From assembly GCA_002811645.1 (NCBI GenBank), contig PDIP01000038.1, positions 59,129-123,128 of the forward strand: a DNA stretch of 64,000 bases, written 5' to 3'. Each line of letters begins with the position of its first letter. Position 1 is the first letter of the stretch. A program made the translations under genes and the position numbers. This DNA is from Corallochytrium limacisporum Hawaii (Eukaryota; Protista; Pluriformea). The notes under the pieces are model-generated. The model ran no database searches, was not told where the DNA came from, and saw only the letters and a list, made by a program, of their open reading frames with translations. Shown here piece after piece: positions 12,639 to 61,090 of this stretch.

Positions 12639-15083
12639 ATGTACAACGACGGGTACAGTCACTCAAACATCAACTACTTCGTTGATGCGTTGATCAGCCG
12701 GGACGAGGATGAAGCCGCTCTGGATGTGTTCGAATCGCATGGCGCAGTCCCCAATGGTACGTCACCAAACCCAGGAAACCCGCTGCCACCACCACCGGGA
12801 GGAGATGACTCCAGTTTCAACCTTACCTCCATGCAGGCTGCGTTTGTGCAGACCTTTGTGCTCATGTTCATTGGTTACTTTAGCGTACGGATAGGTTTTG
12901 TGCCTCATTCGCTAACTCGGGCCCTGAGTGTAGTCGTGACAAAGTTCACTTTACCGGCATTGATTTTCCTGGCTCTAGGAGAGGCACATATGGGTAAGAC
13001 CATGGGTGACTTTGTCCTGGGTGTTTTGGTGAGCAAGATGTTGGTTTTCATCGGAGTTGTGGTGGTAACATTTATTGCAAGCGGCAATAGTCTTGGATGG
13101 ACCTCGACTGCAGGCATTCGGGGTATCTTTGTGACCCAATCCAATGATTTTGCGGTTGCGCTTCCCATCTTGAGTTCCTTGTTCAAAGATCCTCATTCAA
13201 ACTATATTCAGATGATTTATGTTGTAGCGCCCTTGCAGCTGTTACTCATCAATTCGCTTGGCTACATTCTCATTGAAAATGGCAAGGCGTCCACAGATAT
13301 CAATTATTTCAGTACGGGAGCCGATCGGAGCAAGCTGTATCGGTACTGGGCTGTGTTTGCTTCGCTGGCACAAAACCCGATCACAGTCATGACCGTTGCC
13401 GGTCTACTCTGCAATTTGATATTCAACGGACATCTTCCTCGTATTTTCACCACGATTCTTCAGCCGCTGTCAGACGCATACATTGCAACAGCGTTGCTAA
13501 CTCTTGGTATGAGTCTGAGCGGAAGGGTTGGTGGTCTGAGCATCGATAAGTTCATGCTCCCGTTGATCCTTTCTGGAGTTAAGATCGTGATCCTCCCGGC
13601 AATCATGCGGCCTGTTGTGTCCATGATTGCTGGCAGTCGTGACCTGGCAGTCTTCTCGTTCCTTTACGGCATGGCGCCAACTGCTCCGAGTGTCTATTAC
13701 TACAGCCACTACTATGATATTGAGCCGGAGATCATTGCACCTGCGACGGTACTCTGTACCATATTGTCCGCACCCGTGCTCTACTTGAGCGCCGAGGTGG
13801 TAGCCATGGGATACGGTGACAGCAGTCGCCCCGGGGTTGTCAGTACTCTAGTGAACAGTCTGACGGGTATCTCAGAGGCCAGCTTTTTATGCATCGTGCT
13901 CCTGAGTCTGCTGTTCTTTGTGGCCCAGAAGCGCACAAAGTATCCGTATTATCGCTATTTGCCTTACATACTCAGCGTGCAGGCTGCGCTGAGCATCACC
14001 GTGACCATTCGTGAGTTTGCGAAGTTGAGCTACACTGTAATGGAGTTCAGGCAAGCATTTGAATTTTTCTTCTTGCAGCTGACTCGATACTTCACCATGG
14101 TTGTCTTTGTGCATATGGTGTACATGCACTCTACGGGACACATACATCTGCCCCGATGGGGTGAGTTCCTTGTCCACGGCATTGCCTGGATCATCCTACC
14201 AGCGGTGACCGTGATCCTCGGTGTTACCGGATCATTTCGTTACAACTGTGACTCGGAAATTGATCCCATTTATTGCTGGCCGTACCGGGTAAGCAGTCCA
14301 GCCACGCACATCAGTATGGCTTTCATGTGTCTTCTTGTTGGGACAGTGGGTGGATCTCTGATATGGCTTCGTCGAATTTCCTCCCGCGCAAGAAGTCCAG
14401 GAGGCCGTCCAGACTATGGCATATACTTCCGTCGCGACAGCACCACTCTGCCCGGCAGTGTCACGTCAGTTAACCAAGTCACGGACGGCGACAATATTAC
14501 CACCGACGGCGTCGTCAATCCTGCTCTGCTGGCCCAGAGCATGGAAGTCGAGCGCGACAGTGAGGAAGGCAGCGAGGATGAGGAGTGGAACAACTACAAT
14601 GTCCGAGTTTCCCTACAGCAGACTCCGTATGATGAAACGTACTATCGCAATACCATATGGGGGTTGTACATGATGATGCTGAGTCTGTGCGAGGTTAGTC
14701 TTGACACCTACACACTCTACCTCAGCAGCGATGCGCTGATCATGATTGAGTTTAAATACCTGGTCGGTGCGCTGCACTACGGTGCCGGCATAGTCGCTCT
14801 GCTGATCTTTGGCCTTGGTCCTCGGGTGCTCAACCCAGCGCGAAGCCTAATGTCCTGGATCCGCAATCCACGAGGCAACCCCGTCAACCTGCTTGATGAC
14901 ATTCGGAGCGGTGAACGTGACGGCCTTGATAGCGACGCAGTGATTGCGGACGAATGGACCTCCCTGCCAGTTGAGGGCATGGATGGAGAGATCGCGCCTG
15001 CGACCTACAGCAATCTGTTCGAGCGGCAATATGATGGCACGATGGGTCTGCGACGCAGTGATCTGCGAGGATCCTCTGGGTAG
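12639..15083 (+). CDS. GPR155: GPR155/LYCHOS-like membrane protein (PIN-like transporter domain plus GPCR-like domain), no DEP domain evident
   Basis: 814 aa, multi-pass. FVTQSNDFAVALP matches GPR155 FATQSNDFALGYP; QMIYVVAPLQLLLINSLGYI, NPITVMT and FLYGMAPTAPSV match the permease half. A second block of about 7 hydrophobic helices with a long cytosolic loop follows. Confidence 0.85.
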   Translation: MYNDGYSHSNINYFVDALISRDEDEAALDVFESHGAVPNGTSPNPGNPLPPPPGGDDSSFNLTSMQAAFVQTFVLMFIGYFSVRIGFVPHSLTRALSVVVTKFTLPALIFLALGEAHMGKTMGDFVLGVLVSKMLVFIGVVVVTFIASGNSLGWTSTAGIRGIFVTQSNDFAVALPILSSLFKDPHSNYIQMIYVVAPLQLLLINSLGYILIENGKASTDINYFSTGADRSKLYRYWAVFASLAQNPITVMTVAGLLCNLIFNGHLPRIFTTILQPLSDAYIATALLTLGMSLSGRVGGLSIDKFMLPLILSGVKIVILPAIMRPVVSMIAGSRDLAVFSFLYGMAPTAPSVYYYSHYYDIEPEIIAPATVLCTILSAPVLYLSAEVVAMGYGDSSRPGVVSTLVNSLTGISEASFLCIVLLSLLFFVAQKRTKYPYYRYLPYILSVQAALSITVTIREFAKLSYTVMEFRQAFEFFFLQLTRYFTMVVFVHMVYMHSTGHIHLPRWGEFLVHGIAWIILPAVTVILGVTGSFRYNCDSEIDPIYCWPYRVSSPATHISMAFMCLLVGTVGGSLIWLRRISSRARSPGGRPDYGIYFRRDSTTLPGSVTSVNQVTDGDNITTDGVVNPALLAQSMEVERDSEEGSEDEEWNNYNVRVSLQQTPYDETYYRNTIWGLYMMMLSLCEVSLDTYTLYLSSDALIMIEFKYLVGALHYGAGIVALLIFGLGPRVLNPARSLMSWIRNPRGNPVNLLDDIRSGERDGLDSDAVIADEWTSLPVEGMDGEIAPATYSNLFERQYDGTMGLRRSDLRGSSG

Positions 15084-24442: not shown

Positions 24443-27400
24443 TCATGCTGCTTCACGGGCATGGTTGTACTTTCCCAGAATTCTGCGCAACACTTGGAGG
24501 CTGAAGGGTTTAGACATATAGTCGTCCATGCCAACCCTAAGACACTTCTCCATGTCCTCGGGCATTGCATTTGCAGTGACGGCCACAATGTATGGCGGTC
24601 GGGAGTCGTTCAGAGTCTCCCGAATTTGACGAGTGGCGCCGAAGCCATCCATCAGTGGCATGTGCATGTCCATGAAGATCACATGCGGCACTTGATTCTG
24701 TGAATTAAGGACCATTTCGCAGGCTTCGATGCCATTGTTCGCAATGGAAATCTGAGCCGTCGTCTCATCAATGCCGACCTTCTCGAGAAACTTGATTAGG
24801 AGCATCTGGTTGATCTCGTTGTCTTCCACAATGAGCACGCGCCAGGGAACCTGGGAGCCGGTGCTCACAATGTCCACCACTTCGTCAGAATGAGGCACAT
24901 GATCAGCTGCGCCCAATCCCACATCCAGTGGCAGGACTGGCGCGGGTTCATTTGAGATCATGTGGAAGCCACGAACTTCCATGATGCGTTTAGCCACAGT
25001 CATGAATCGCACAGGTTTGTTCACATCGCAAACAATATGTTCCAGGATGGGATTGATGTCCTCGCTGAGACTGCTGGCACTGTCAGTCTTTCTGTTGTCC
25101 TCGCTCATGCGGGTCGCGGCTGGCACAGGAGAATCCATGAACGGCGTCTGGTTCTTATTGTGGCCCATAATGACAAAGCGCATGTCTGGGTTCGCGTCCA
25201 GTAGACGGACAATAGCATTTTGAGTGGCGTTGAAAGTGCAGTCCGACGTCTGGGAGCCCGTGAAGCTGCCTCTCCGGCTGCTGGTTCGTGTGGATTCCGA
25301 GCCAGAGTGACCGTCACTAGAAAGCAATACCAGATCGATGCCGCCTCGGGCGACCAGGGGAGTTGCCTCCTCGACTGTTGCACACCCGTTTATCCTAAGA
25401 CCCCAGTTCTGGAATTGCCGCACCATAGCTGTGCGCGATCCATTGTGGCTGTCCACAACTAGCACAGTGTTGCGGTGAGGAGTGAAAGGGTCCTTGGAGA
25501 TCTTCTTGAAGTCAGGAGGACCCTCACCTTCAGCGAGATAGCCAATAAAATTTGCCGGGAATTCCTCTGGACTAAGCTTGCAAGCCTCCACCCTGACATT
25601 GAAGCAGAAGCTGGAGCCTACGTCCACAGTGGATTGTTCTAGCCAAGCATCACCACCCATCAGGCGGGCCATCTGCCGACAAATAGCCAGACCCAGTCCA
25701 GTACCGCCGTAGACTCTCGAGGTCGAAGCATCAAGCTGGTGGAATGGTCTGAAGAGCATGCCTTGCTTTTCCGCAGGAATGCCGACACCAGTGTCGAGGA
25801 TCGTGAAACGGATTCTGACACCACTGCTGCTGGCCAGACCACGGCCGTCTGAGCTACATAAAGACTGAGACGGGGTCACGGGGCCCTGGGCCTCGTACAA
25901 CCCTGCTGAGATCGAGCTCTTTAGATGAGACTCTACTGGTTTCGCTACTGATGTGGTATGGACACTCAGATTCGGGGTCGAGCGGCTCTGTTCCTCTTCT
26001 GGGAGGCTACAGTCGTGCAGATAGTCCAGACTCTCTACCATTGCATTGGTTGCCGGCTGATGTTTCTGGCCCCGAGAGAAGGATCGGGACATGCGGCCTA
26101 TGCGATGGCTGCTTCCAGAGCCTCTCAGTAGACGATTTAGACCACGGTTACTAGTGTTCTCCGAATGGGATTGGACTGCCTCTTCGTTGGGTTCTGACAT
26201 GGCGGTGTCTGACATTGCGATGGAGTTGGTCTCCAAGCTGACCTGGACACTGACAGATCCGGTGTCCGTGAATTTCAAGGCGTTGCTTAGGAAATTGCAC
26301 AGAACCTGGCGCAGGCGATGCTCATCAGCCTCGATAAACTCGGGTACGGTATCATCCATGACATAGTATACATCCAAATGGGCGTTTTTCATGCCAGGGA
26401 CAGTGATGTGAAGGGCATCTTCGATACACGAGCGCAGACTGAAGCGAGTCTTTTGCAGTTCCATTTGCCCACTTTCTATCTTAGAAAAGTCGAGCAAATC
26501 ATTCACAACCATGAGAAGGTGGTGACCGCTGACCTTAATGTTCTTAAGGTATTCACGTTGCTGTAGATTGAGCTCCGCATCCTCAAGCAGAGAAGTCATA
26601 CCAATCACACCGGATATTGGCGTGCGCAGTTCGTGGCTCATGTTCGCCAGAAACAGGGTCTTCGCCTCACTCAGAGCCTTGGCCTTATCACGTTCAAGTT
26701 CGGCTATGCGCTGACGTTTACGGTATTTGATGTTCTTCTGCCTCTTCCACACGAGGAAGGCTAAGAAAGCAGCCGCACAGGTGGCCAACACAATCACCAC
26801 ATAAATCCACGTTGGAGTTGTATGTTGTGGTGGGAGACCAACATTGAGGCTAAGCTCTCCTTCTTGCACCACTTCATCTTCATAGAGGAATACCACGGAT
26901 GCCCGTCCTTCGGTTTTAAAGGTCAGCGAGAAGCAGAGCGTGTAACTATTCTGACGACTGAAAGACCGATCGCCGCAGTCGACTGGTTGAGCAATTTTGC
27001 GTTCACCGTCGCCATCTTCATAGGTAGCAACCAGTAAGTCCTCGTGGATAGAGGTAGGGTTGTCAAAGGAGTCTTGAGGATGTACGGCAATGATGAGATT
27101 GCTGCCCGCTTGCACAAGGCCATCCGGCAAACCATCTACGCGGAAGTGTGCTACATCAGGCGGGCCGGCAACGATCTCGCGAATAAACGAAGGACCGCCT
27201 TGCAAGGCTTCACCATTGATGATTACGGTAATGGTATAGACATCTGCTAGAGTAATATCAGCGTAAAATGTCTCACTACCATCGGGATTCACTTCAGAGA
27301 ATGGACGCACAAGTGTCTTCTGACCAGAGATGAAAACACGGACTCTCTCACCCGGCTCATTGCGGAGATTGCCAAACTGATCCGCAGTCGTGATAGTGAG

Positions 27401-29854
27401 ACTCTGGTTCAGGCTTGCCGGCAGCGTTGTAGATTCAATCAGAGGTCCAACGGCGGTACTGGTTTCACCAGCGGCAGGGCCAGGAACAGTGGTGATCGTA
27501 AACGGTGAATCCAGGAAAGCACCCACGGCGTCGGCACCCGCAACTTCGGTGGCATCGAAGCGGTTAGGCACGGACAGGTGGAAATCATGAGATGTTCCAC
27601 GCATGAAGATGATCGCCGTCTCAATGACGACTGTTCCTGTGGCAGTAGCCCTAAAGGGCGCCTGGAACGTCTGTGACTCTTCATCATACTGCCAGTCAAT
27701 TAGTGCTCCATCGGATAAGTCAAATTGGTTAGTCATGGCATCTCGTTCATCAGGACTGTCGGTGATGTTCAAGACGGACGAGACTATGCGGTATCGCGGA
27801 TGAGGTAGAACGATATCACCCTTCTTGTCACGTGCGTCGAAAATGAGTTTCAACTCAGTTCCGGCTGCAAAGGTTATCGCCATTCCGTCATTCTCAATGT
27901 TATCAGTCGTATTCGTATTGACCACACTGATCTTACACTTCATCACATCTGGGAAGAAAACACTGCGGTACGAACCAGGGAAGAGTACGCCTTGGTCGCT
28001 GTCACCGGCCAGCAATGCGATCGTCATTTCATGGCAGTTTTGAGTGAGGAAGGTCGTGGGTGGAATGACTGTGGATGCGCCGAGGACAGCACCAAGAGTC
28101 GGTACAGCAGTCGGCAATGTCTCAACTATGCCATCCATAACCACTGCAGTATCGTCCTTGTTCAAACGGACACTCTCGTGCCATATATCAAGTTCAATGG
28201 CCATGACGTCTGCAAAGTGAGGATGGATGTGGTAGAAGCATTTCTCACGCGGCTTGAAGGGCACAGGACTGAGAGAGCCAGGTAAGTTTCCGCTTTCTTC
28301 AGTAAGTTCAATAACACCGGAGCATTCCTTGCCAGCGTTGAGGTCCAACACGACATTCACTGGAGCCATTGAATTGTTCTCAACAGTGATATCGACGATG
28401 CAGCCCTCACCGATGAGAAATTCCATTTCTACCTCGCGCTCCGTGGGACCTAGAGTGACGGACTCTTGCAGTTGAACTTCTCCATCATGAGTGACTGTGA
28501 TGGAAGCAGAAAGATCAACATTGTAGACTACCTCCTCGTAAAAGATGAGATAGTCAAAGTCAATGTCATCCTTAGTCATGCCAGGTACATAAACAGGTCC
28601 TTCCAGCCGGTTGAGTAGCAAGTCGTTCAAGACGAAATTTACCGAAAAGAGCTGTTCCGGCAGGACAGTCGGTCCCAGACGCGCCGATTGGGACATATTT
28701 TGACCTATGGATAGCGGCTGAGTCTGCGGTCCGACTAGACCAAGTGTGTTGGGGCGAGTGAACGCCCAGGTTGCAGACCAACATGGTCTGTCCTCTCCTG
28801 CCATTGAACGACTATTCAACTTACTGTACATGATTACAACGCTCTGAAAAGGCACCTCCACTTGAAGCGTACTAGGAGGTGGATTATCTTCGTCGTAGAG
28901 CACACTGTTTGTTTTGAGAGTGGGGTCGTTCCAGACGTCTCCAACACCCCCACTCACTGTGTAGATTTCGAGGCTCTCATCTTCGCCAAAGGTGACATTA
29001 AAGAGAGATATGTCCATTACCAATCCTAATTCCTCATTGAGTACTGTCGGTGCACCAGCGCTTGGTAGAAAGACCGAGATACAATCCTTCTTCATAGTAT
29101 CGCGCGATGAGTCCAAGAGGTCACCGGAGAGTCCGGTATAGAGACCTGCTCCATTGCACCTCGCTCCGCGCGGCAGGACTTGAAAAGGACCGTATGCAGC
29201 ATCACTCTCCATGTACTGTGCATAGACTTGCTGCCCTTTGAAGAAGTATATGACGCCATCATTTCGGAAGACTCCATCAATGCCATCTGGTACACCTGGG
29301 TACAACTCGCCAATAGCTGTTGTCGATCCTCGTACGCGTTGTGGTCCGCTAAGGGTCAACGTGTAGTCGATGACAGTTGTCGGCAAGAACAGACGCAGAA
29401 TATCATCATCAACGACGAACGTTGCTGTAATGGTACCAGGGACAATACCTTCGATAGCGACCTCCTGGGCAACACACCCGAAAACACCCCGTCTCCAAAC
29501 GAGGTAAAGCAAATCTCCTACGATGATTACCGTGACGGTATTATTCTTGTACACGGCATCAACATCCTCCGGGCGCTCAAACCAGTCCCCACATTTACCT
29601 TCAACAGGCTTATGCGTTATGAAAAACTCATCTGTTGGCGTGATCTCTGTGCTGCGTTTTGTGAGGAAGTCGTAAACCTGTACGCCATCCTCGGAAATGA
29701 ATACGGCCCGCGCATCCCGAGTTGGTTCTGGAGTATCAATGTATACACCCTTCATAGGCAAACGTATCCCATCGAATGCACGTTGTGCCGCTGTCAGCAC
29801 TGCAAAGCTGCAGATCACTGCCAGCACGGCTGTAACCCATCTCTGCACTTGCAT
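24443..29854 (-). CDS. Single-pass receptor hybrid histidine kinase: signal peptide, hemopexin-like, CUB-like x2, filamin-type Ig repeats, TM, HisKA, HATPase, pseudo-receiver, receiver
   Basis: H-box FLANMSHELRTP (His1074), N-box LRQVLCNFLSNALKFT, G1 DTGVGI, F-box LFRPFHQ, G2 GGTGLGLAI. Terminal REC: VLIVEDN...FMDMHMP (Asp1729)...VTANA...SKP. TM WIYVVIVLATCAAAFLAFLVW followed by KRQK. The kinase call is firm; ectodomain names are less certain. Confidence 0.95.
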   Translation of the reverse strand: MQVQRWVTAVLAVICSFAVLTAAQRAFDGIRLPMKGVYIDTPEPTRDARAVFISEDGVQVYDFLTKRSTEITPTDEFFITHKPVEGKCGDWFERPEDVDAVYKNNTVTVIIVGDLLYLVWRRGVFGCVAQEVAIEGIVPGTITATFVVDDDILRLFLPTTVIDYTLTLSGPQRVRGSTTAIGELYPGVPDGIDGVFRNDGVIYFFKGQQVYAQYMESDAAYGPFQVLPRGARCNGAGLYTGLSGDLLDSSRDTMKKDCISVFLPSAGAPTVLNEELGLVMDISLFNVTFGEDESLEIYTVSGGVGDVWNDPTLKTNSVLYDEDNPPPSTLQVEVPFQSVVIMYSKLNSRSMAGEDRPCWSATWAFTRPNTLGLVGPQTQPLSIGQNMSQSARLGPTVLPEQLFSVNFVLNDLLLNRLEGPVYVPGMTKDDIDFDYLIFYEEVVYNVDLSASITVTHDGEVQLQESVTLGPTEREVEMEFLIGEGCIVDITVENNSMAPVNVVLDLNAGKECSGVIELTEESGNLPGSLSPVPFKPREKCFYHIHPHFADVMAIELDIWHESVRLNKDDTAVVMDGIVETLPTAVPTLGAVLGASTVIPPTTFLTQNCHEMTIALLAGDSDQGVLFPGSYRSVFFPDVMKCKISVVNTNTTDNIENDGMAITFAAGTELKLIFDARDKKGDIVLPHPRYRIVSSVLNITDSPDERDAMTNQFDLSDGALIDWQYDEESQTFQAPFRATATGTVVIETAIIFMRGTSHDFHLSVPNRFDATEVAGADAVGAFLDSPFTITTVPGPAAGETSTAVGPLIESTTLPASLNQSLTITTADQFGNLRNEPGERVRVFISGQKTLVRPFSEVNPDGSETFYADITLADVYTITVIINGEALQGGPSFIREIVAGPPDVAHFRVDGLPDGLVQAGSNLIIAVHPQDSFDNPTSIHEDLLVATYEDGDGERKIAQPVDCGDRSFSRQNSYTLCFSLTFKTEGRASVVFLYEDEVVQEGELSLNVGLPPQHTTPTWIYVVIVLATCAAAFLAFLVWKRQKNIKYRKRQRIAELERDKAKALSEAKTLFLANMSHELRTPISGVIGMTSLLEDAELNLQQREYLKNIKVSGHHLLMVVNDLLDFSKIESGQMELQKTRFSLRSCIEDALHITVPGMKNAHLDVYYVMDDTVPEFIEADEHRLRQVLCNFLSNALKFTDTGSVSVQVSLETNSIAMSDTAMSEPNEEAVQSHSENTSNRGLNRLLRGSGSSHRIGRMSRSFSRGQKHQPATNAMVESLDYLHDCSLPEEEQSRSTPNLSVHTTSVAKPVESHLKSSISAGLYEAQGPVTPSQSLCSSDGRGLASSSGVRIRFTILDTGVGIPAEKQGMLFRPFHQLDASTSRVYGGTGLGLAICRQMARLMGGDAWLEQSTVDVGSSFCFNVRVEACKLSPEEFPANFIGYLAEGEGPPDFKKISKDPFTPHRNTVLVVDSHNGSRTAMVRQFQNWGLRINGCATVEEATPLVARGGIDLVLLSSDGHSGSESTRTSSRRGSFTGSQTSDCTFNATQNAIVRLLDANPDMRFVIMGHNKNQTPFMDSPVPAATRMSEDNRKTDSASSLSEDINPILEHIVCDVNKPVRFMTVAKRIMEVRGFHMISNEPAPVLPLDVGLGAADHVPHSDEVVDIVSTGSQVPWRVLIVEDNEINQMLLIKFLEKVGIDETTAQISIANNGIEACEMVLNSQNQVPHVIFMDMHMPLMDGFGATRQIRETLNDSRPPYIVAVTANAMPEDMEKCLRVGMDDYMSKPFSLQVLRRILGKYNHAREAA

Positions 29855-56854: not shown

Positions 56855-59800
56855 TTACATTTCAGCAGTATCCAGCTGCTTTTGGATCTCTTCAGCGCTA
56901 ACATAAGGCGCTGCATTCGTCAAAAACGAAATGCGTCCCTTCAGACTTTCAGGTAGTACCTGGAAAATGATCTCCGGTTCGTCGATGCCCTTCATTTTGT
57001 AGGCACCCAGCAGACTAATGGTGATGTTCTCCAATTTCTCGGCCGGCAACACGTCCTGAATCTCTTGCAGTGTGCGGCGGCTGAGCACGACCTGACCTCC
57101 GTCGGCAACGCCAGAAATACGCGCACTCCGGTTAACCATAGGACCGTAGTAATCCATTCGGCCTGTTGTCGGATCCCGTTCGCAGTCAGGACGCCCAGAG
57201 TGGATGCCCATGCGCACCAACAGACCGTTGATCACCTTGTTACCCTTATCATCGCTCTTGTTGCACTCCTCTAGGTTGAGCAGAGCCTGCGGCCATGCCA
57301 TTTCCATGAGATGCCGTTGGCAGTCCATGCACCATAGAAGTGCATTAACGGGGGAGCTAAAGGCCACCATAAATGCATCACCCTCGGTCTTGACTTCGTA
57401 GCCATGTCGGTACAATAGAATCTTGCGCATAAGCTCGTGGTGCATGCGAACTGCAGATCGCATGGCTGTCTCTTGGGTTTCCCAAAGCAAGGTGGAGTTC
57501 TTAATATCGGTGAAAACCAGTGTGACGTCTCCAGTAGGAGGTTCCACATTGGCGCCCGTCAGAATTGCCTTCTCAAGGGCCTCCGGGCCCTCCTTTATTT
57601 CCAGCAGACTCCACACTTTACGCATTTCCTGAACGCTGGACATGCTGATTTGGCCCTTCTTGGTCCTTGCCGTGACCTTTGGGGGATAAATGACAGTAAC
57701 GGCAATGTTGCCCTTGCCTTTGTATAACATGACGTAATCCCGGATCTTGCGGCTGGCAGCGTGGGGATTGGGTGCACTGCGGACCATGCAGCACACCATT
57801 TTCGGGGTCACCACCTCCCAAACAGCACTGTTGGCAATGATGATTACCTCATCGCTATTGTTCAAGGTCACGGTGGATGAGGTGCCTTTGGCACTTATGT
57901 AGGGTTTAGAGAACAACCCTAGAGCCCGTGAGAGCGGGCCACGGTCATCACCGGGACTCTCTGGAGGCTCTGCCCCAAAGCAACCCAACCTCTTTCGTTC
58001 TTTAGGTGTGGTTGTGGTGTGGTCTTGGGTCAACACGACGGGCTGTCCTGCACGGCAGAGGACTACCTTTGCGGTGCCCAAATTACAGACGTGCAGCTTG
58101 TTCCTGTGAATGTAGACGCCAGCTGCCATGGCACCGCACCGATAGGACGCCTGGTCCAGTCCCGCAATCTGCCTATTGATGGCCAGGAACGTACTGACGA
58201 GAGTATGTGCAGGGTCATCCTGGTTACGGTCGACCTCGTTCATAAATACCTTATGGAAAATACCGGCGGCCTTGGCAGCACACGCATCGCCGTTGATACC
58301 CTCAAAAAGAACATATGCAGCATCACAGGGAGCAGTCGGGAGGGCTTCGAGAACCACCGGTCGCGCGCAGATCAGTTCCGGCACTGCAGACAAAAGTGTG
58401 GTCCCCGAACGACCTGAATAGGCGGGCATTTCCTCCGTAAATTCCTCCTGAACTTCCTCCTGTATCACGGTCAAGGCTGGTAATTCCTCTTCCCCTCCGC
58501 AGGGGACAGATGTGACCGTACCACATGGTGGAATCACTTGCATTGTATCCGGATAGATTATTGGCTTTCCCAGATGTACATTGCCGCTCAAATCAATAAT
58601 CCGAAGGGTGGGCGACTCCTGCCAGCAGTAGGCGCCTAAAGCGGAATCCAAGTACTCGGGGGCAATCTTCGGTGATCCCTTCGGCAATGCGATCTGGATT
58701 TGGCGCTGGTGACGAGTGGAAAAGACGTTGTTCGCCACATCGAGGATCTGCAAACGATTCAAACCTTCCATCTCTCGTGGAAGCGACATCAAATGATTGT
58801 CACCAACAAAGAAGGCTTCCAGGCGTTGTAAGTGAAGGATATCTGAAGAAATGTCTGCGAGGTTGCATCCAGCACACCAGAAACGCTGCAGATTGGTTAG
58901 ATGCATCAATGGACCAATGTCGTTTACAGCATTGTTGCTGATGTTAAGACACCTCAGAGACCGAATCCTGCCAATTGTATACAGTGCCTCTGGAGACAGG
59001 CGGTTATCACCCAGGTAAAGTTCCTCGAGAAAACAGTTTCCAAAATCGCCCTCAGAATAGTCTTGACTGTCAGGGGATTCGGATGGCGTATTTTTACTCT
59101 GCTCCTGGCTGCGACAGCGAACTGGCTTGACCCGCCTCTTCATTCTCCTGTACAGGAACTTTGATGGAGACGAAGAGCGTCTGAACTTCTTGCGCTCAGT
59201 GGATTGATCCGTCTCAGTGATGCTGTGCTCTGGCACACTCGGCAAACCACTACGGTCACCATGCTTGGCCAGTTGTGGTACGGATTGGATATAATTTGAA
59301 CCAGCCTGTAGCACCCGCAGAGAGGCCATGCGGAAAATGTCATCGGGCAGGCAGGTCAGGAAGTTCATCTGCACGTTGAGCACCCGGAGGGCGGACATTC
59401 TTGCAATGTCGATTGGAAGAGAGAATAGGTTATTGCGAGCGGCACTAAACCATTGAAGCGAATCCAATTGGCAAATATCCTTTGGCAGGGAGTTGAGTTG
59501 ATTGTGTTCTACGTTCAACATTTGTAGAGCATACAAGTTTCCAATTTCAGCTGGCAAGGTCAGCAAGTTGTTGCGACTGATGTCTAACACTGTCAGATTG
59601 GCCCAATTTTGATACTCGTCGATGCTCAGCGATGTGATATTGTTTCGTCCTATCGTAATCTCGTACGCAGTTGACGGTCCCAACTCATAGGAGCCGATTG
59701 CGTTCTCCTGGAAGCTAACCATTTCCAGTCCATGAGTATGATTTACTTGCGGCAAGCGATCCACTCGATTCTTGGCGATCGTGAGAATCTTAAGCGAGGG

Positions 59801-61090
59801 TTGCTCCAAGATGTCATGCGGAAGATGCTCAATAACATTTCGGCTGAGATCTAGGTATTCCAGGTTTGGAAGTTTCTTACCCAACCCGGGTTCGGCGTTC
59901 TCAATGAAGTTTGCTGACAGATTGACATGCCGCAATTGCTTCAGACCCAAGACTTGCTGTGGAATTTGCACGAATTTGTTTTGGCTCAGATCAAGTGTAG
60001 TCAAGGACTGCAGCGAGGTAAAACTGGCAGGTAACTCTTTTAGACGATTTTCACTAAGGTCCAGATGCACCAAATTCTCCAAAATGGATAGCCACTGGCT
60101 AGGAACACTGTAGAGGAGATTTGCACGAGCGAGTAAGACGCCTACTTCCGCAACTTCCTGGAGGAATTGGGCTTTGAATGCCTTATCCTTCAGTGCCTGT
60201 CCCAGGAACAACCCTGAAAGGTCCAATAGTTTCAATTGCGAGCCCCTGGATGAATTACTTCCGTTGGCGTAGATGTTCGGATTCTCGACCATGACGTGGG
60301 CCGGAATCTTACCATTTTCAACCATAGCTAACGCGGGAGTGACTGTGTCGCTGGCCTGTGCCCGCTTGGCGAGCACAAACTGAAAGAATTTGTTGTACTC
60401 GTTACCCTTTTGAATACTCACGTTGTCCTCCTCTGTATAGCCCATGTCGGCCAACCATTCAATCTGCAGTGCCAAAGGATTCTCTTCTTCTTCAAGCAGA
60501 CGCTCCACGCCGTAGCGCCTGACCCAAAGATTGTACTCATCCCACTCCTTTGAATCCAACTTGAACTTCTTGCATGCGCGCCCAACAACATCGGCGGTCA
60601 GCATGGTTAAATCGACCTCAATGGTCTTGAAGCTTGCAAATGACTCACTTCGAAGGTAAATCCGCATAGTGCTCTTCTGCTGCAAGAAGCGGAACGCGAG
60701 ATCGTCAACAGTTGAACTCCCACATCTCTCTGCTACTCCATTCTTCTCCAGTTTCCTGCGAAGGTACAGTACATTCCGAGGTTGTCGCAGACCCAGCTGC
60801 GTGTCCCGTGTCATACTGAAGGGATTCGGGATTTCTGAGACGTTACCGGAGCGCATCCATCGGGATTGGTCGTCGTCTGTGTCCTTTGTGTTTGTGGTTG
60901 TTGCTGAATCGCGTTGATAAGACTTTAGCTCTTCATACCTCATGCTGACACTATGTTTCACCAGGTGCAAGGCACCCAACTGCCCGACTTGCATGCTGCT
61001 TCCATTCCTCAGACATGCGTACCAGCTCAGCCGCCTCAGAATCAAGGAGTCCGTGACCTCGTCGGTCTGACTGGCTTCGAGGGGAACCAT
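56855..61090 (-). CDS. CYR1: Fungal-type (Cyr1-like) adenylate cyclase: Ras-association, LRRs, PP2C-like, class III cyclase
   Basis: RA domain (MRIY...EENPLALQIEWLADMGYTEED), many LxxLxLxxNxL repeats and a PP2C-like fold (LHVCNLG...LTQDH...LSRALG). Cyclase motifs LVFTDIKNST, YEVKTEGDAFMV, RMGIHSG and MDYYGPMVNRSARI. Confidence 0.95.
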   Translation of the reverse strand: MVPLEASQTDEVTDSLILRRLSWYACLRNGSSMQVGQLGALHLVKHSVSMRYEELKSYQRDSATTTNTKDTDDDQSRWMRSGNVSEIPNPFSMTRDTQLGLRQPRNVLYLRRKLEKNGVAERCGSSTVDDLAFRFLQQKSTMRIYLRSESFASFKTIEVDLTMLTADVVGRACKKFKLDSKEWDEYNLWVRRYGVERLLEEEENPLALQIEWLADMGYTEEDNVSIQKGNEYNKFFQFVLAKRAQASDTVTPALAMVENGKIPAHVMVENPNIYANGSNSSRGSQLKLLDLSGLFLGQALKDKAFKAQFLQEVAEVGVLLARANLLYSVPSQWLSILENLVHLDLSENRLKELPASFTSLQSLTTLDLSQNKFVQIPQQVLGLKQLRHVNLSANFIENAEPGLGKKLPNLEYLDLSRNVIEHLPHDILEQPSLKILTIAKNRVDRLPQVNHTHGLEMVSFQENAIGSYELGPSTAYEITIGRNNITSLSIDEYQNWANLTVLDISRNNLLTLPAEIGNLYALQMLNVEHNQLNSLPKDICQLDSLQWFSAARNNLFSLPIDIARMSALRVLNVQMNFLTCLPDDIFRMASLRVLQAGSNYIQSVPQLAKHGDRSGLPSVPEHSITETDQSTERKKFRRSSSPSKFLYRRMKRRVKPVRCRSQEQSKNTPSESPDSQDYSEGDFGNCFLEELYLGDNRLSPEALYTIGRIRSLRCLNISNNAVNDIGPLMHLTNLQRFWCAGCNLADISSDILHLQRLEAFFVGDNHLMSLPREMEGLNRLQILDVANNVFSTRHQRQIQIALPKGSPKIAPEYLDSALGAYCWQESPTLRIIDLSGNVHLGKPIIYPDTMQVIPPCGTVTSVPCGGEEELPALTVIQEEVQEEFTEEMPAYSGRSGTTLLSAVPELICARPVVLEALPTAPCDAAYVLFEGINGDACAAKAAGIFHKVFMNEVDRNQDDPAHTLVSTFLAINRQIAGLDQASYRCGAMAAGVYIHRNKLHVCNLGTAKVVLCRAGQPVVLTQDHTTTTPKERKRLGCFGAEPPESPGDDRGPLSRALGLFSKPYISAKGTSSTVTLNNSDEVIIIANSAVWEVVTPKMVCCMVRSAPNPHAASRKIRDYVMLYKGKGNIAVTVIYPPKVTARTKKGQISMSSVQEMRKVWSLLEIKEGPEALEKAILTGANVEPPTGDVTLVFTDIKNSTLLWETQETAMRSAVRMHHELMRKILLYRHGYEVKTEGDAFMVAFSSPVNALLWCMDCQRHLMEMAWPQALLNLEECNKSDDKGNKVINGLLVRMGIHSGRPDCERDPTTGRMDYYGPMVNRSARISGVADGGQVVLSRRTLQEIQDVLPAEKLENITISLLGAYKMKGIDEPEIIFQVLPESLKGRISFLTNAAPYVSAEEIQKQLDTAEM

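What the first reader, a model, noticed from the sequence alone, without database searches (positions are those of the whole stretch)
24443..29854. Receptor histidine kinase with an animal-style hemopexin/CUB/filamin ectodomain: candidate undescribed two-component receptor class
Seen: one 1803-aa ORF with a signal peptide and about 1000 aa of predicted ectodomain. It holds hemopexin-like repeats (PEDVDAVYK; YPGVPDGIDGVFRNDGVIYFFKGQQVY, ~29300-29220), two CUB-like modules (RCNGAGLYTGLSGDL...; ECSGVIELTEESGNL...PREKCFYHI, ~28330) and about three filamin-type Ig repeats (AGTELKLIFDARDKKGD, DSPFTITTVPG, TTADQFGN, YTITVIINGEALQGGP). One TM helix (~26747-26809) leads through a short coiled coil, with no visible HAMP/PAS/GAF, into an intact HisKA-HATPase and receiver. 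Established: eukaryotic sensor HKs typically use PAS, GAF, HAMP, CHASE or ethylene-binding inputs; animals lack such HKs; hemopexin and CUB modules are typical of animal extracellular protein recognition. Inference: this is an RTK-like type I receptor wired to a His-Asp phosphorelay, possibly sensing proteins, matrix or cell contact. I know of no description of this architecture but cannot search for one.
Basis: partly seen in the sequence, partly recalled or inferred. Interest (0 to 1): 0.9.

Follow-up and report, generated by a model that had tools for sequence, protein, structure and literature searches.

The report
Histidine kinase with adhesion-receptor-like ectodomain
A single-celled relative of animals has a surface receptor whose outside part is built from protein-binding modules typical of animal adhesion and matrix proteins, while its inside part is a bacterial-style histidine kinase; I found no earlier description of this combination, and what it senses is unknown.

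Summary
The gene is real: one intronless 1803-aa ORF (24443-29854, minus). It encodes a predicted signal peptide, a ~990-aa ectodomain, one TM helix, an intact HisKA/HATPase, a dead receiver and an intact receiver. RNA-like contigs join ectodomain, TM and kinase. Ectodomain tests: hemopexin-type propeller (supported), two divergent CUB-like domains (moderate and weak-to-moderate), an unassigned beta domain, two clear filamin-type Ig repeats plus one divergent. No known HK sensor fold was detected. The genome (24.1 Mb, intronless) is probably Corallochytrium limacisporum (inferred). It has ten other HK-type genes with ordinary sensors, two HPt proteins and response regulators, so a relay exists. 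No homologue of the ectodomain was found among 1.84 billion representatives, in metagenome or viral contigs, or in the genome itself, so 'receptor class' is unsupported: it is a single orphan. Single-pass propeller+Ig HKs exist in Bacteroidota, a surface-protein ectodomain HK exists in Thecamonas, and CUB is common in Bacteroidota, so 'animal-style' is overstated. Best reading: a lineage-specific, domain-shuffled hybrid HK that senses a macromolecule or surface. The scan noted only this gene's cytoplasmic insert before, not the ectodomain on other DNA.

The parts
24443..29854 (-). Intronless ORF, 1803 aa, single-pass hybrid histidine kinase
   Evidence: one DNA contig spans it and RNA-like contigs cover it without joints
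29786..29854 (-). Predicted signal peptide (aa 1-23)
   Evidence: hydropathy peak aa 3-27; small residues at -3/-1; SignalP not run
29177..29713 (-). Hemopexin-like beta-propeller (aa ~48-226; Cys88/Cys127)
   Evidence: phmmer hits to hemopexin proteins, best E 5.8e-7; PF00045 22.4 bits in the genome search; AF2 model pLDDT 65, best Foldseek and VIA matches are MMP/vitronectin hemopexin domains; the alignment used for the model was hemopexin-biased
28763..29158 (-). CUB-like module 1 (aa 233-364; Cys233, Cys258), divergent
   Evidence: hhalign to a 30-sequence CUB profile end to end, 107 columns; 0/300 shuffles reach 90 columns but 14/300 reach the score; HMM score not significant
28331..28747 (-). 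Unassigned beta-rich module (aa ~370-508), possibly a third CUB/jelly-roll
   Evidence: no Pfam hit; ESM lead CUB 0.82, lead only; CUB HMM 11-16/500 shuffles, short alignment only
27956..28324 (-). CUB-like module 2 (aa 511-633; Cys511, Cys539; acidic residues E560, D567/D568, D618 near the calcium-site positions of ligand-binding CUBs)
   Evidence: best region of the whole protein against the CUB HMM, 0/500 and 1/500 shuffles; hhalign 108 columns, 0/300 shuffles; calcium-site reading is from my own knowledge of CUB domains
27485..27877 (-). Divergent filamin-type Ig repeat (aa ~660-790, with insertions)
   Evidence: 3/300 shuffles reach the score; shares the D-x-x-G motif in alignment
27188..27481 (-). 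Filamin-type Ig repeat (aa 792-889)
   Evidence: E 6e-15 to an HMM of filamin repeats, 0/300 shuffles; PF00630 E 0.014; phmmer hits to E 5e-18
26852..27166 (-). Filamin-type Ig repeat (aa 897-1001)
   Evidence: E 5e-6, 0/300 shuffles
26747..26809 (-). Single transmembrane helix (aa 1016-1036), basic residues on the C-terminal side
26666..26746 (-). Short charged helical linker, no HAMP/PAS/GAF (38 aa from TM end to His1074)
26468..26665 (-). HisKA; phospho-acceptor His1074 at 26633-26635
   Evidence: PF00512 E 5.5e-21; H-box intact
25589..26329 (-). HATPase_c with intact N, G1, F, G2, G3 boxes, split by a 137-aa Ser-rich insert (25823-26233)
   Evidence: PF02518 E 5e-23; motifs; inserts at the same place in paralogues L015, L017, L019, L021
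24980..25471 (-). Pseudo-receiver domain (Ser at the phospho-Asp position)
   Evidence: weak PF00072; motif check
24482..24838 (-). Receiver domain, Asp1729 at 24668-24670, acidic pair, Thr and Lys intact
   Evidence: PF00072 E 3.3e-24

Best explanation
An expressed, single-copy, type I membrane hybrid histidine kinase of a unicellular holozoan (probably Corallochytrium limacisporum). It arose by lineage-specific shuffling of generic extracellular modules onto a hybrid HK core. Proposed working: the HisKA dimer holds two ectodomains together, and the filamin-type Ig repeats form a stalk that presents the distal hemopexin propeller and CUB-like domains. Binding of a macromolecule (protein, peptide, glycan or a surface, possibly calcium-dependent at CUB2) changes how the two stalks pack. 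With no HAMP/PAS, that change passes through the single TM helix and a 38-residue helix straight to the kinase, as proposed for the Bacteroides single-pass sensor BT4663. Phosphate then moves His1074 -> Asp1729 -> one of two HPt proteins -> response regulators (including a REC-REC-bHLH factor and a Ser/Thr kinase-REC). Shown: ORF, topology pattern, intact catalytic motifs, continuity in RNA-like contigs, module similarities, presence of relay partners. Inferred: dimer, stalk role, ligand type, signalling motion, which partner is used.
For: ORF and topology; catalytic motifs intact. An RNA-like contig spans 25656-28531 from HATPase through TM into CUB2, with no joints; coverage stops at the gene's ends. 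In a second isolate or sample 6 of 9 ectodomain/TM differences are synonymous against 24% expected, P=0.008, which suggests the ectodomain is under constraint. Hemopexin, filamin, CUB. Twelve ectodomain Cys and seven N-glycosylation sequons fit a secreted, disulfide-bonded region. Two HPt proteins and several response regulators in the genome. Eukaryotic neighbours (dynein, AROM, RRS1) on the same contig exclude bacterial contamination.
Against: No ligand or activity data. No homologue, so there is no conservation to map a binding face. CUB calls rest on weak profile scores and a criterion (full-length alignment) chosen after seeing the result; Pfam and PDB sequence searches did not detect them. 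The whole-ectodomain fold failed (pLDDT 33). The tool only guesses that runs X3/X4 are RNA. Hemopexin folds also bind haem and small ligands, and CUB/Ig arrays can be mere spacers (own knowledge).
Confidence: 0.55

Rival explanations
1. A wall-, coat- or mechano-sensor. The ectodomain is a long stalk anchored in the cell coat or substrate, and it reports turgor, stretch or attachment (an Sln1-like role) rather than a specific ligand.
For: Filamin-type Ig repeats are force-bearing modules and sit next to the membrane with a direct TM-to-kinase link (mechanical role from own knowledge). SLN1-type osmosensing is retained in animal relatives (PMC6040629).
Against: Sln1/AHK1-type osmosensors have two TM helices around a loop (PMC6324907), unlike this protein. 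The distal hemopexin and CUB-like modules with paired Cys are more typical of binding modules.
Confidence: 0.2
2. A small-molecule or oligosaccharide sensor that works like a Bacteroidota hybrid two-component sensor (propeller binds sugar or haem; nutrient sensing in an osmotroph).
For: Same overall layout: signal peptide, propeller, Ig-like domain, one TM, hybrid kinase (PMC3243724). Such proteins are among the kinase-core hits (PF07494/PF07495). One shape match of the propeller model is a Reg_prop cluster.
Against: No sequence similarity between this ectodomain and those sensors or any of 129 HKs. The propeller is ~180 aa with hemopexin-type matches, not two 7-bladed Reg_prop propellers. The kinase core does not group with them.
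Confidence: 0.15
3. A recent or drifting chimera: a surface-protein gene fused to an HK, with the ectodomain not coupled to kinase output (constitutive or regulated from inside).
For: Orphan status, strongly diverged modules, lower GC3 in the ectodomain (0.51) than in the cytoplasmic part (0.60).
Against: Excess of synonymous differences in the ectodomain, paired cysteines kept, ORF intact in two samples, no donor paralogue in the genome.
Confidence: 0.08
4. Assembly or annotation artefact (two genes joined, or a bacterial contaminant).
For: The kinase core's best hits are bacterial, which is usual for eukaryotic HKs in this database.
Against: No stop in 5.4 kb; an independent 2015 data set bridges the junction in one contig; eukaryotic neighbours.
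Confidence: 0.02

Closest known systems
Eukaryotic hybrid sensor histidine kinases (HisKA-HATPase_c-REC; survey PMC6324907)
   Same: Cytoplasmic core, His-Asp-HPt-response regulator relay; present in animal relatives (11 HKs in Capsaspora) and absent from animals.
   Different: Surveyed inputs are PAS, GAF, HAMP, CHASE, ethylene-binding, phytochrome, rhodopsin, MASE1, NarX-like or multi-TM. The survey text has no hemopexin, filamin or CUB-domain mention; Corallochytrium is not in the holozoan part of its sample.
Bacteroidota hybrid two-component sensors (BT4663 type; Reg_prop propellers + Y_Y_Y)
   Same: Large (700-900 aa) ectodomain of propeller plus a membrane-proximal beta domain, hybrid kinase (PMC3243724); single TM directly before the HisKA helix in the members retrieved here.
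   Different: Two 7-bladed Reg_prop propellers binding oligosaccharides and an AraC output, versus a hemopexin-type propeller, CUB-like and filamin-type repeats and no DNA-binding domain. No ectodomain similarity and no grouping of the kinase core.
Thecamonas trahens TtrahHK8 (VSP-CYCc-GAF-HisKA-HATPase-REC)
   Same: A protist HK carrying a surface-protein type of extracellular module not otherwise seen in HKs (PMC6324907).
   Different: Different modules (Giardia VSP-like), with cyclase and GAF domains between sensor and kinase.
Dictyostelium DhkA
   Same: Eukaryotic membrane HK that detects a peptide (SDF-2), so peptide sensing by a eukaryotic HK is known (PMC6324907).
   Different: Uses a CHASE domain, not protein-recognition modules on a type I stalk.
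Animal and holozoan type I receptors with CUB/Ig/hemopexin modules (neuropilins, CDCP1, membrane-type MMPs, receptor tyrosine kinases)
   Same: Signal peptide, modular beta-rich ectodomain, one TM; the best structural matches of the propeller are MMP and vitronectin hemopexin domains.
   Different: They signal through Tyr/Ser kinases, adaptors or proteolysis, not a His-Asp relay (own knowledge); no such protein aligns along the ectodomain.

Membership tests
Hybrid sensor histidine kinase | HisKA with phospho-acceptor His | tested here: met
   PF00512 74.8 bits, His1074 in an intact H-box
Hybrid sensor histidine kinase | HATPase_c with N, G1, F, G2 boxes | tested here: met
   PF02518 82 bits; boxes intact around a 137-aa insert
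Hybrid sensor histidine kinase | Fused receiver with phospho-Asp, acidic pair, Thr, Lys | tested here: met
   PF00072 85.6 bits; Asp1729
Hybrid sensor histidine kinase | HPt and response regulators in the genome | tested here: met
   2 HPt; REC-only, REC-REC-bHLH and kinase-REC proteins
Hybrid sensor histidine kinase | Autokinase and phosphotransfer activity | not testable with these tools
   needs biochemistry
Known eukaryotic HK sensor groups (CHASE, Cache, ETR, PAS/GAF, HAMP, Sln1-type) | Sensor domain of one of these families or 2-3 TM layout | tested here: not met
   no such Pfam hit, one TM only, no similarity to 129 HKs including own paralogues
Bacteroidota hybrid two-component sensor | Reg_prop repeats + Y_Y_Y domain + AraC output | tested here: not met
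Bacteroidota hybrid two-component sensor | Kinase core descended from these proteins | tested here: inconclusive
   quick tree only; the query is a long branch in an unresolved fork, outside the 7-member propeller-sensor clade
Hemopexin-like domain | Hemopexin repeat sequence and four-bladed propeller fold | tested here: met
   sequence E 5.8e-7, last blade clear, first blades divergent; top 22 Foldseek rows are all hemopexin-type domains, VIA Z 11; model built on a hemopexin-biased alignment
CUB domain (module 2, aa 511-633) | Full-length match to a CUB profile with Cys1/Cys2 in register | tested here: met
   0-1/500 and 0/300 shuffles; below Pfam detection
CUB domain (module 1, aa 233-364) | Full-length match to a CUB profile with Cys1/Cys2 in register | tested here: inconclusive
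   end-to-end alignment (0/300 shuffles that long) but score reached by 14/300; HMM not significant
CUB domain | Ten-stranded jelly-roll fold | tested here: inconclusive
   single-sequence model unusable, pLDDT 33; no natural homologues for an alignment
Filamin-type Ig repeat | Match to filamin repeat profile | tested here: met
   two repeats E 6e-15 and 5e-6, third weak; the source hits are PF00630-positive
Type I membrane protein | Cleaved signal peptide, one TM, positive-inside | tested here: inconclusive
   hydropathy and charge pattern fit; SignalP/DeepTMHMM not available; surface location untested

The most novel reading that the evidence does not exclude
This is a working receptor-tyrosine-kinase analogue built on His-Asp chemistry. 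It binds a protein or cell-surface ligand through hemopexin and CUB modules and controls transcription through HPt and a REC-bHLH factor. That would show that animal relatives wired protein-recognition ectodomains to two-component relays before animals lost them. Further members may lie undetected in other holozoans because their modules fall below Pfam thresholds.
Probability: 0.25. Interest if true: 0.85.

Novelty: new variant of a known kind. Interest (0 to 1): 0.62.

Why it matters
Animals signal across the membrane with modular type I receptors and have lost histidine kinases; their unicellular relatives keep both toolkits. This gene mixes them: an adhesion/matrix-type ectodomain on a His kinase. 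If it binds a macromolecule, it extends eukaryotic two-component inputs from small molecules, light and osmotic stress to cell-cell or cell-surface recognition. It would also give a natural single-pass HK for studying how a signal crosses the membrane without HAMP. It is testable: stable transfection exists for Corallochytrium (bioRxiv 10.1101/2020.11.12.379420, title and abstract only), and the relay partners are few (2 HPt). Its weight is limited by being a single orphan gene with no known ligand.

Tried and rejected
Single-sequence AlphaFold of the whole ectodomain: unusable (pLDDT 33). Word-index homologue search with the ectodomain: self only. Exhaustive phmmer over 1.84 billion representatives: only repeat-level hits, none with an H-box. 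Pattern scans of metagenome and viral contigs: nothing. Paralogues of the ectodomain or its modules in the genome: none; the genome's only Pfam-level CUB is in an attractin-like protein. Pfam and PDB sequence searches of the CUB-like segments: no CUB hit; weak hits to CD55 and WDR5 treated as chance. BLAST of CUB1 against CUB2: E 0.28, not significant. A search for CUB homologues with the attractin CUB found nothing, so a CUB profile was built from Bacteroidota domains instead. Kinase-core tree: the careful search did not finish and the quick tree is unresolved; the sample is biased to the query's own best hits, so no donor or gene-transfer claim is made. The idea that this genome lacks tyrosine kinases was dropped: high-scoring PF07714 matches exist and were not classified.

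Full report
Observation. The window holds one uninterrupted ORF at 24443-29854 on the minus strand, 1803 aa. Hydropathy shows two segments only: an N-terminal one (aa ~3-27) that reads as a signal peptide, and aa 1016-1036 followed by a basic stretch, the pattern of a type I membrane protein. Pfam finds HisKA (aa 1064-1129), HATPase_c and a receiver (aa 1673-1791) above cut-off, and no HAMP, PAS, GAF, CHASE or Cache domain. H, N, G1, F, G2 and G3 boxes and the receiver's acidic pair, Asp1729, Thr and Lys are intact. A 137-aa Ser-rich insert splits the ATPase, and a first receiver (aa ~1462-1625) has Ser at the phospho-Asp position.

Is it one gene? One DNA contig spans the stretch. Two 2015 runs that the tool guesses to be RNA cover the ORF with no joints, and their coverage stops close to the gene's ends. 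One contig runs from 25656 to 28531, from the ATPase across the TM into the second CUB-like module. The second run differs at 17 coding positions. In the signal/ectodomain/TM part 6 of 9 differences are synonymous where 24% would be expected (P=0.008; small numbers), which suggests the ectodomain is under constraint. Neighbours are eukaryotic (dynein heavy chain, pentafunctional AROM, RRS1), so this is no bacterial contaminant.

Organism. The assembly has 24.11 Mb in 286 contigs and its genes are intronless. That matches the published Corallochytrium limacisporum genome (24.1 Mb, 0.0 introns per kb; PMC5560861). This is an inference, not a database identification.

Ectodomain modules. Hemopexin: exhaustive phmmer gives five hits to the N-terminal region (best E 5.8e-7), four of them checked and Pfam hemopexin-positive, one a sea-cucumber MMP-17. 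A model built on an alignment with these hits (pLDDT 65) has four groups of strands; its top 22 Foldseek matches are hemopexin-type domains, and VIA gives Z 11 to MMP9/MMP2. The alignment biases the model towards that fold, and only the last blade is a clear sequence match. Filamin-type Ig: most phmmer hits are filamin-repeat proteins (to E 5e-18), from a protist and metagenomes. A profile of those repeats finds aa 792-889 (E 6e-15) and 897-1001 (E 5e-6), plus a weak third repeat at aa ~660-790. CUB: Pfam and PDB sequence searches miss both modules, and the ESM Atlas gives CUB only as a lead (0.79). I built a CUB profile from 29 bacterial domains plus the genome's own attractin-like CUB. Module 2 (aa 511-633) is the best-scoring region of the whole protein, reached by 0-1 of 500 shuffles. 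With hhalign both modules align end to end with the first two cysteines in register (107 and 108 columns). No shuffle of 300 gives an alignment of 90 columns, and the other beta segments give short ones. On score alone module 2 is reached by 0 of 300 shuffles and module 1 by 14 of 300. The length criterion was chosen after seeing the result. So CUB2 is moderately supported and CUB1 weakly to moderately. CUB2 keeps acidic residues near the positions of the calcium site of ligand-binding CUBs (family knowledge from memory). The 140 aa between them are unassigned. The whole-ectodomain fold failed. The ectodomain has no similarity to any of 129 HKs, including the genome's own.

Distribution. The ectodomain has no full-length homologue among 1.84 billion cluster representatives (the linked protein collection holds EukProt entries), none by word index, none in metagenome or viral contigs and no paralogue in the genome. 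None of the 119 best kinase-core hits carries CUB, filamin or hemopexin annotation. The kinase core is ~50% identical to many bacterial hybrid HKs and 24-45% to its paralogues; the quick tree leaves it unplaced. It is therefore a single orphan, not a demonstrated class.

Context. The genome has 11 HisKA matches. The others carry conventional inputs: NarX/PilJ-like, Cache-type, and by inspection ethylene-receptor-like, phytochrome, CHASE-like and PAS/GAF. Two HPt proteins and several response regulators exist, among them a REC-REC-bHLH factor and a Ser/Thr kinase-REC. A full relay is available; which partners this kinase uses is unknown.

Mechanism. The most likely reading (0.55) is a macromolecule- or surface-sensing receptor. 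Filamin-type repeats form a stalk, hemopexin and CUB-like modules bind the ligand, and the change passes through one TM helix and a 38-residue linker to the HisKA dimer, as in the scissor-like model reported for Bacteroides BT4663 (PMC8534201). Phosphate then moves to Asp1729, HPt and a regulator. The ORF, motifs, continuity and partners are shown; ligand, motion and output are inferred. Rivals are a wall/mechano-sensor (0.2), a small-molecule or sugar sensor (0.15), an uncoupled chimera (0.08) and an artefact (0.02).

Comparison with what is known. It is a member of the hybrid HK family by every sequence test. It fits none of the described eukaryotic sensor groups. The 2019 survey of eukaryotic HKs has no hemopexin, filamin or CUB-domain mention (PMC6324907), and full-text searches for this combination found nothing relevant. 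I could not read Hehenberger 2017, and the library lacks most subscription papers. Precedents limit the novelty. Bacteroidota hybrid sensors have a 700-900-aa propeller + Y_Y_Y ectodomain on a hybrid kinase (PMC3243724). Thecamonas has an HK with a surface-protein (VSP) ectodomain. Dictyostelium DhkA detects a peptide. The modules are also not animal-specific: CUB was found in 128 of 151 genomes sampled from one bacterial order.

Verdict. A real, probably expressed, apparently undescribed architecture: a new variant of a known kind. A specialist in two-component signalling or animal origins would find it striking, and it is experimentally reachable, but it is a single gene with an unknown ligand and partly weak domain calls. 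Interest 0.62.

Noticed in passing
L032:829-2817 (+) (G000:C7): Response regulator with two receiver domains and a C-terminal bHLH domain: an unusual direct His-Asp output to a bHLH transcription factor.
   Followed up: partly
window 56855-61090 (-): Fungal-type (Cyr1-like) adenylate cyclase layout: RA + LRR + PP2C + cyclase, in a probable holozoan.
   Followed up: no
L015:2996-6028 (-) (G000:C229): Ethylene-receptor-like hybrid HK with three N-terminal TM helices, judged by inspection; similar proteins are described in Capsaspora (PMC6324907).
   Followed up: no
L022:3302-6127 (+) (G000:C110): Phytochrome-like protein with a degenerate H-box region and a HATPase-like domain.
   Followed up: no
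L013:781-3750 (+) and L017:2734-5967 (-): Hybrid HKs with bacterial-type PilJ/NarX-like and Cache-type (PF21623) sensors.
   Followed up: partly
L030:1-1935 (+) (G000:C176): Ser/Thr kinase with a C-terminal receiver (Rim15-like layout), a second possible relay output.
   Followed up: no
L024:1312-3267 (+) (G000:C182): Attractin-like protein (signal peptide, CUB, Cys-rich segment, kelch propeller): the genome's only Pfam-level CUB.
   Followed up: partly
L050-L079 (bacterial genomes G001-G150): CUB domains in 128 of 151 genomes sampled from the order of a Taishania (Bacteroidota) genome, mostly in 1000-aa proteins.
   Followed up: no
window 12639-15083 (+): 814-aa protein with a Mem_trans (auxin-carrier-like) domain; possibly GPR155/LYCHOS-like, not tested.
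   Followed up: no
window 28398-28653 and 29278-29500: A 2025 marine metagenome run holds two short, low-depth pieces 99-100% identical to the ectodomain DNA, a possible environmental trace of this organism.
   Followed up: no
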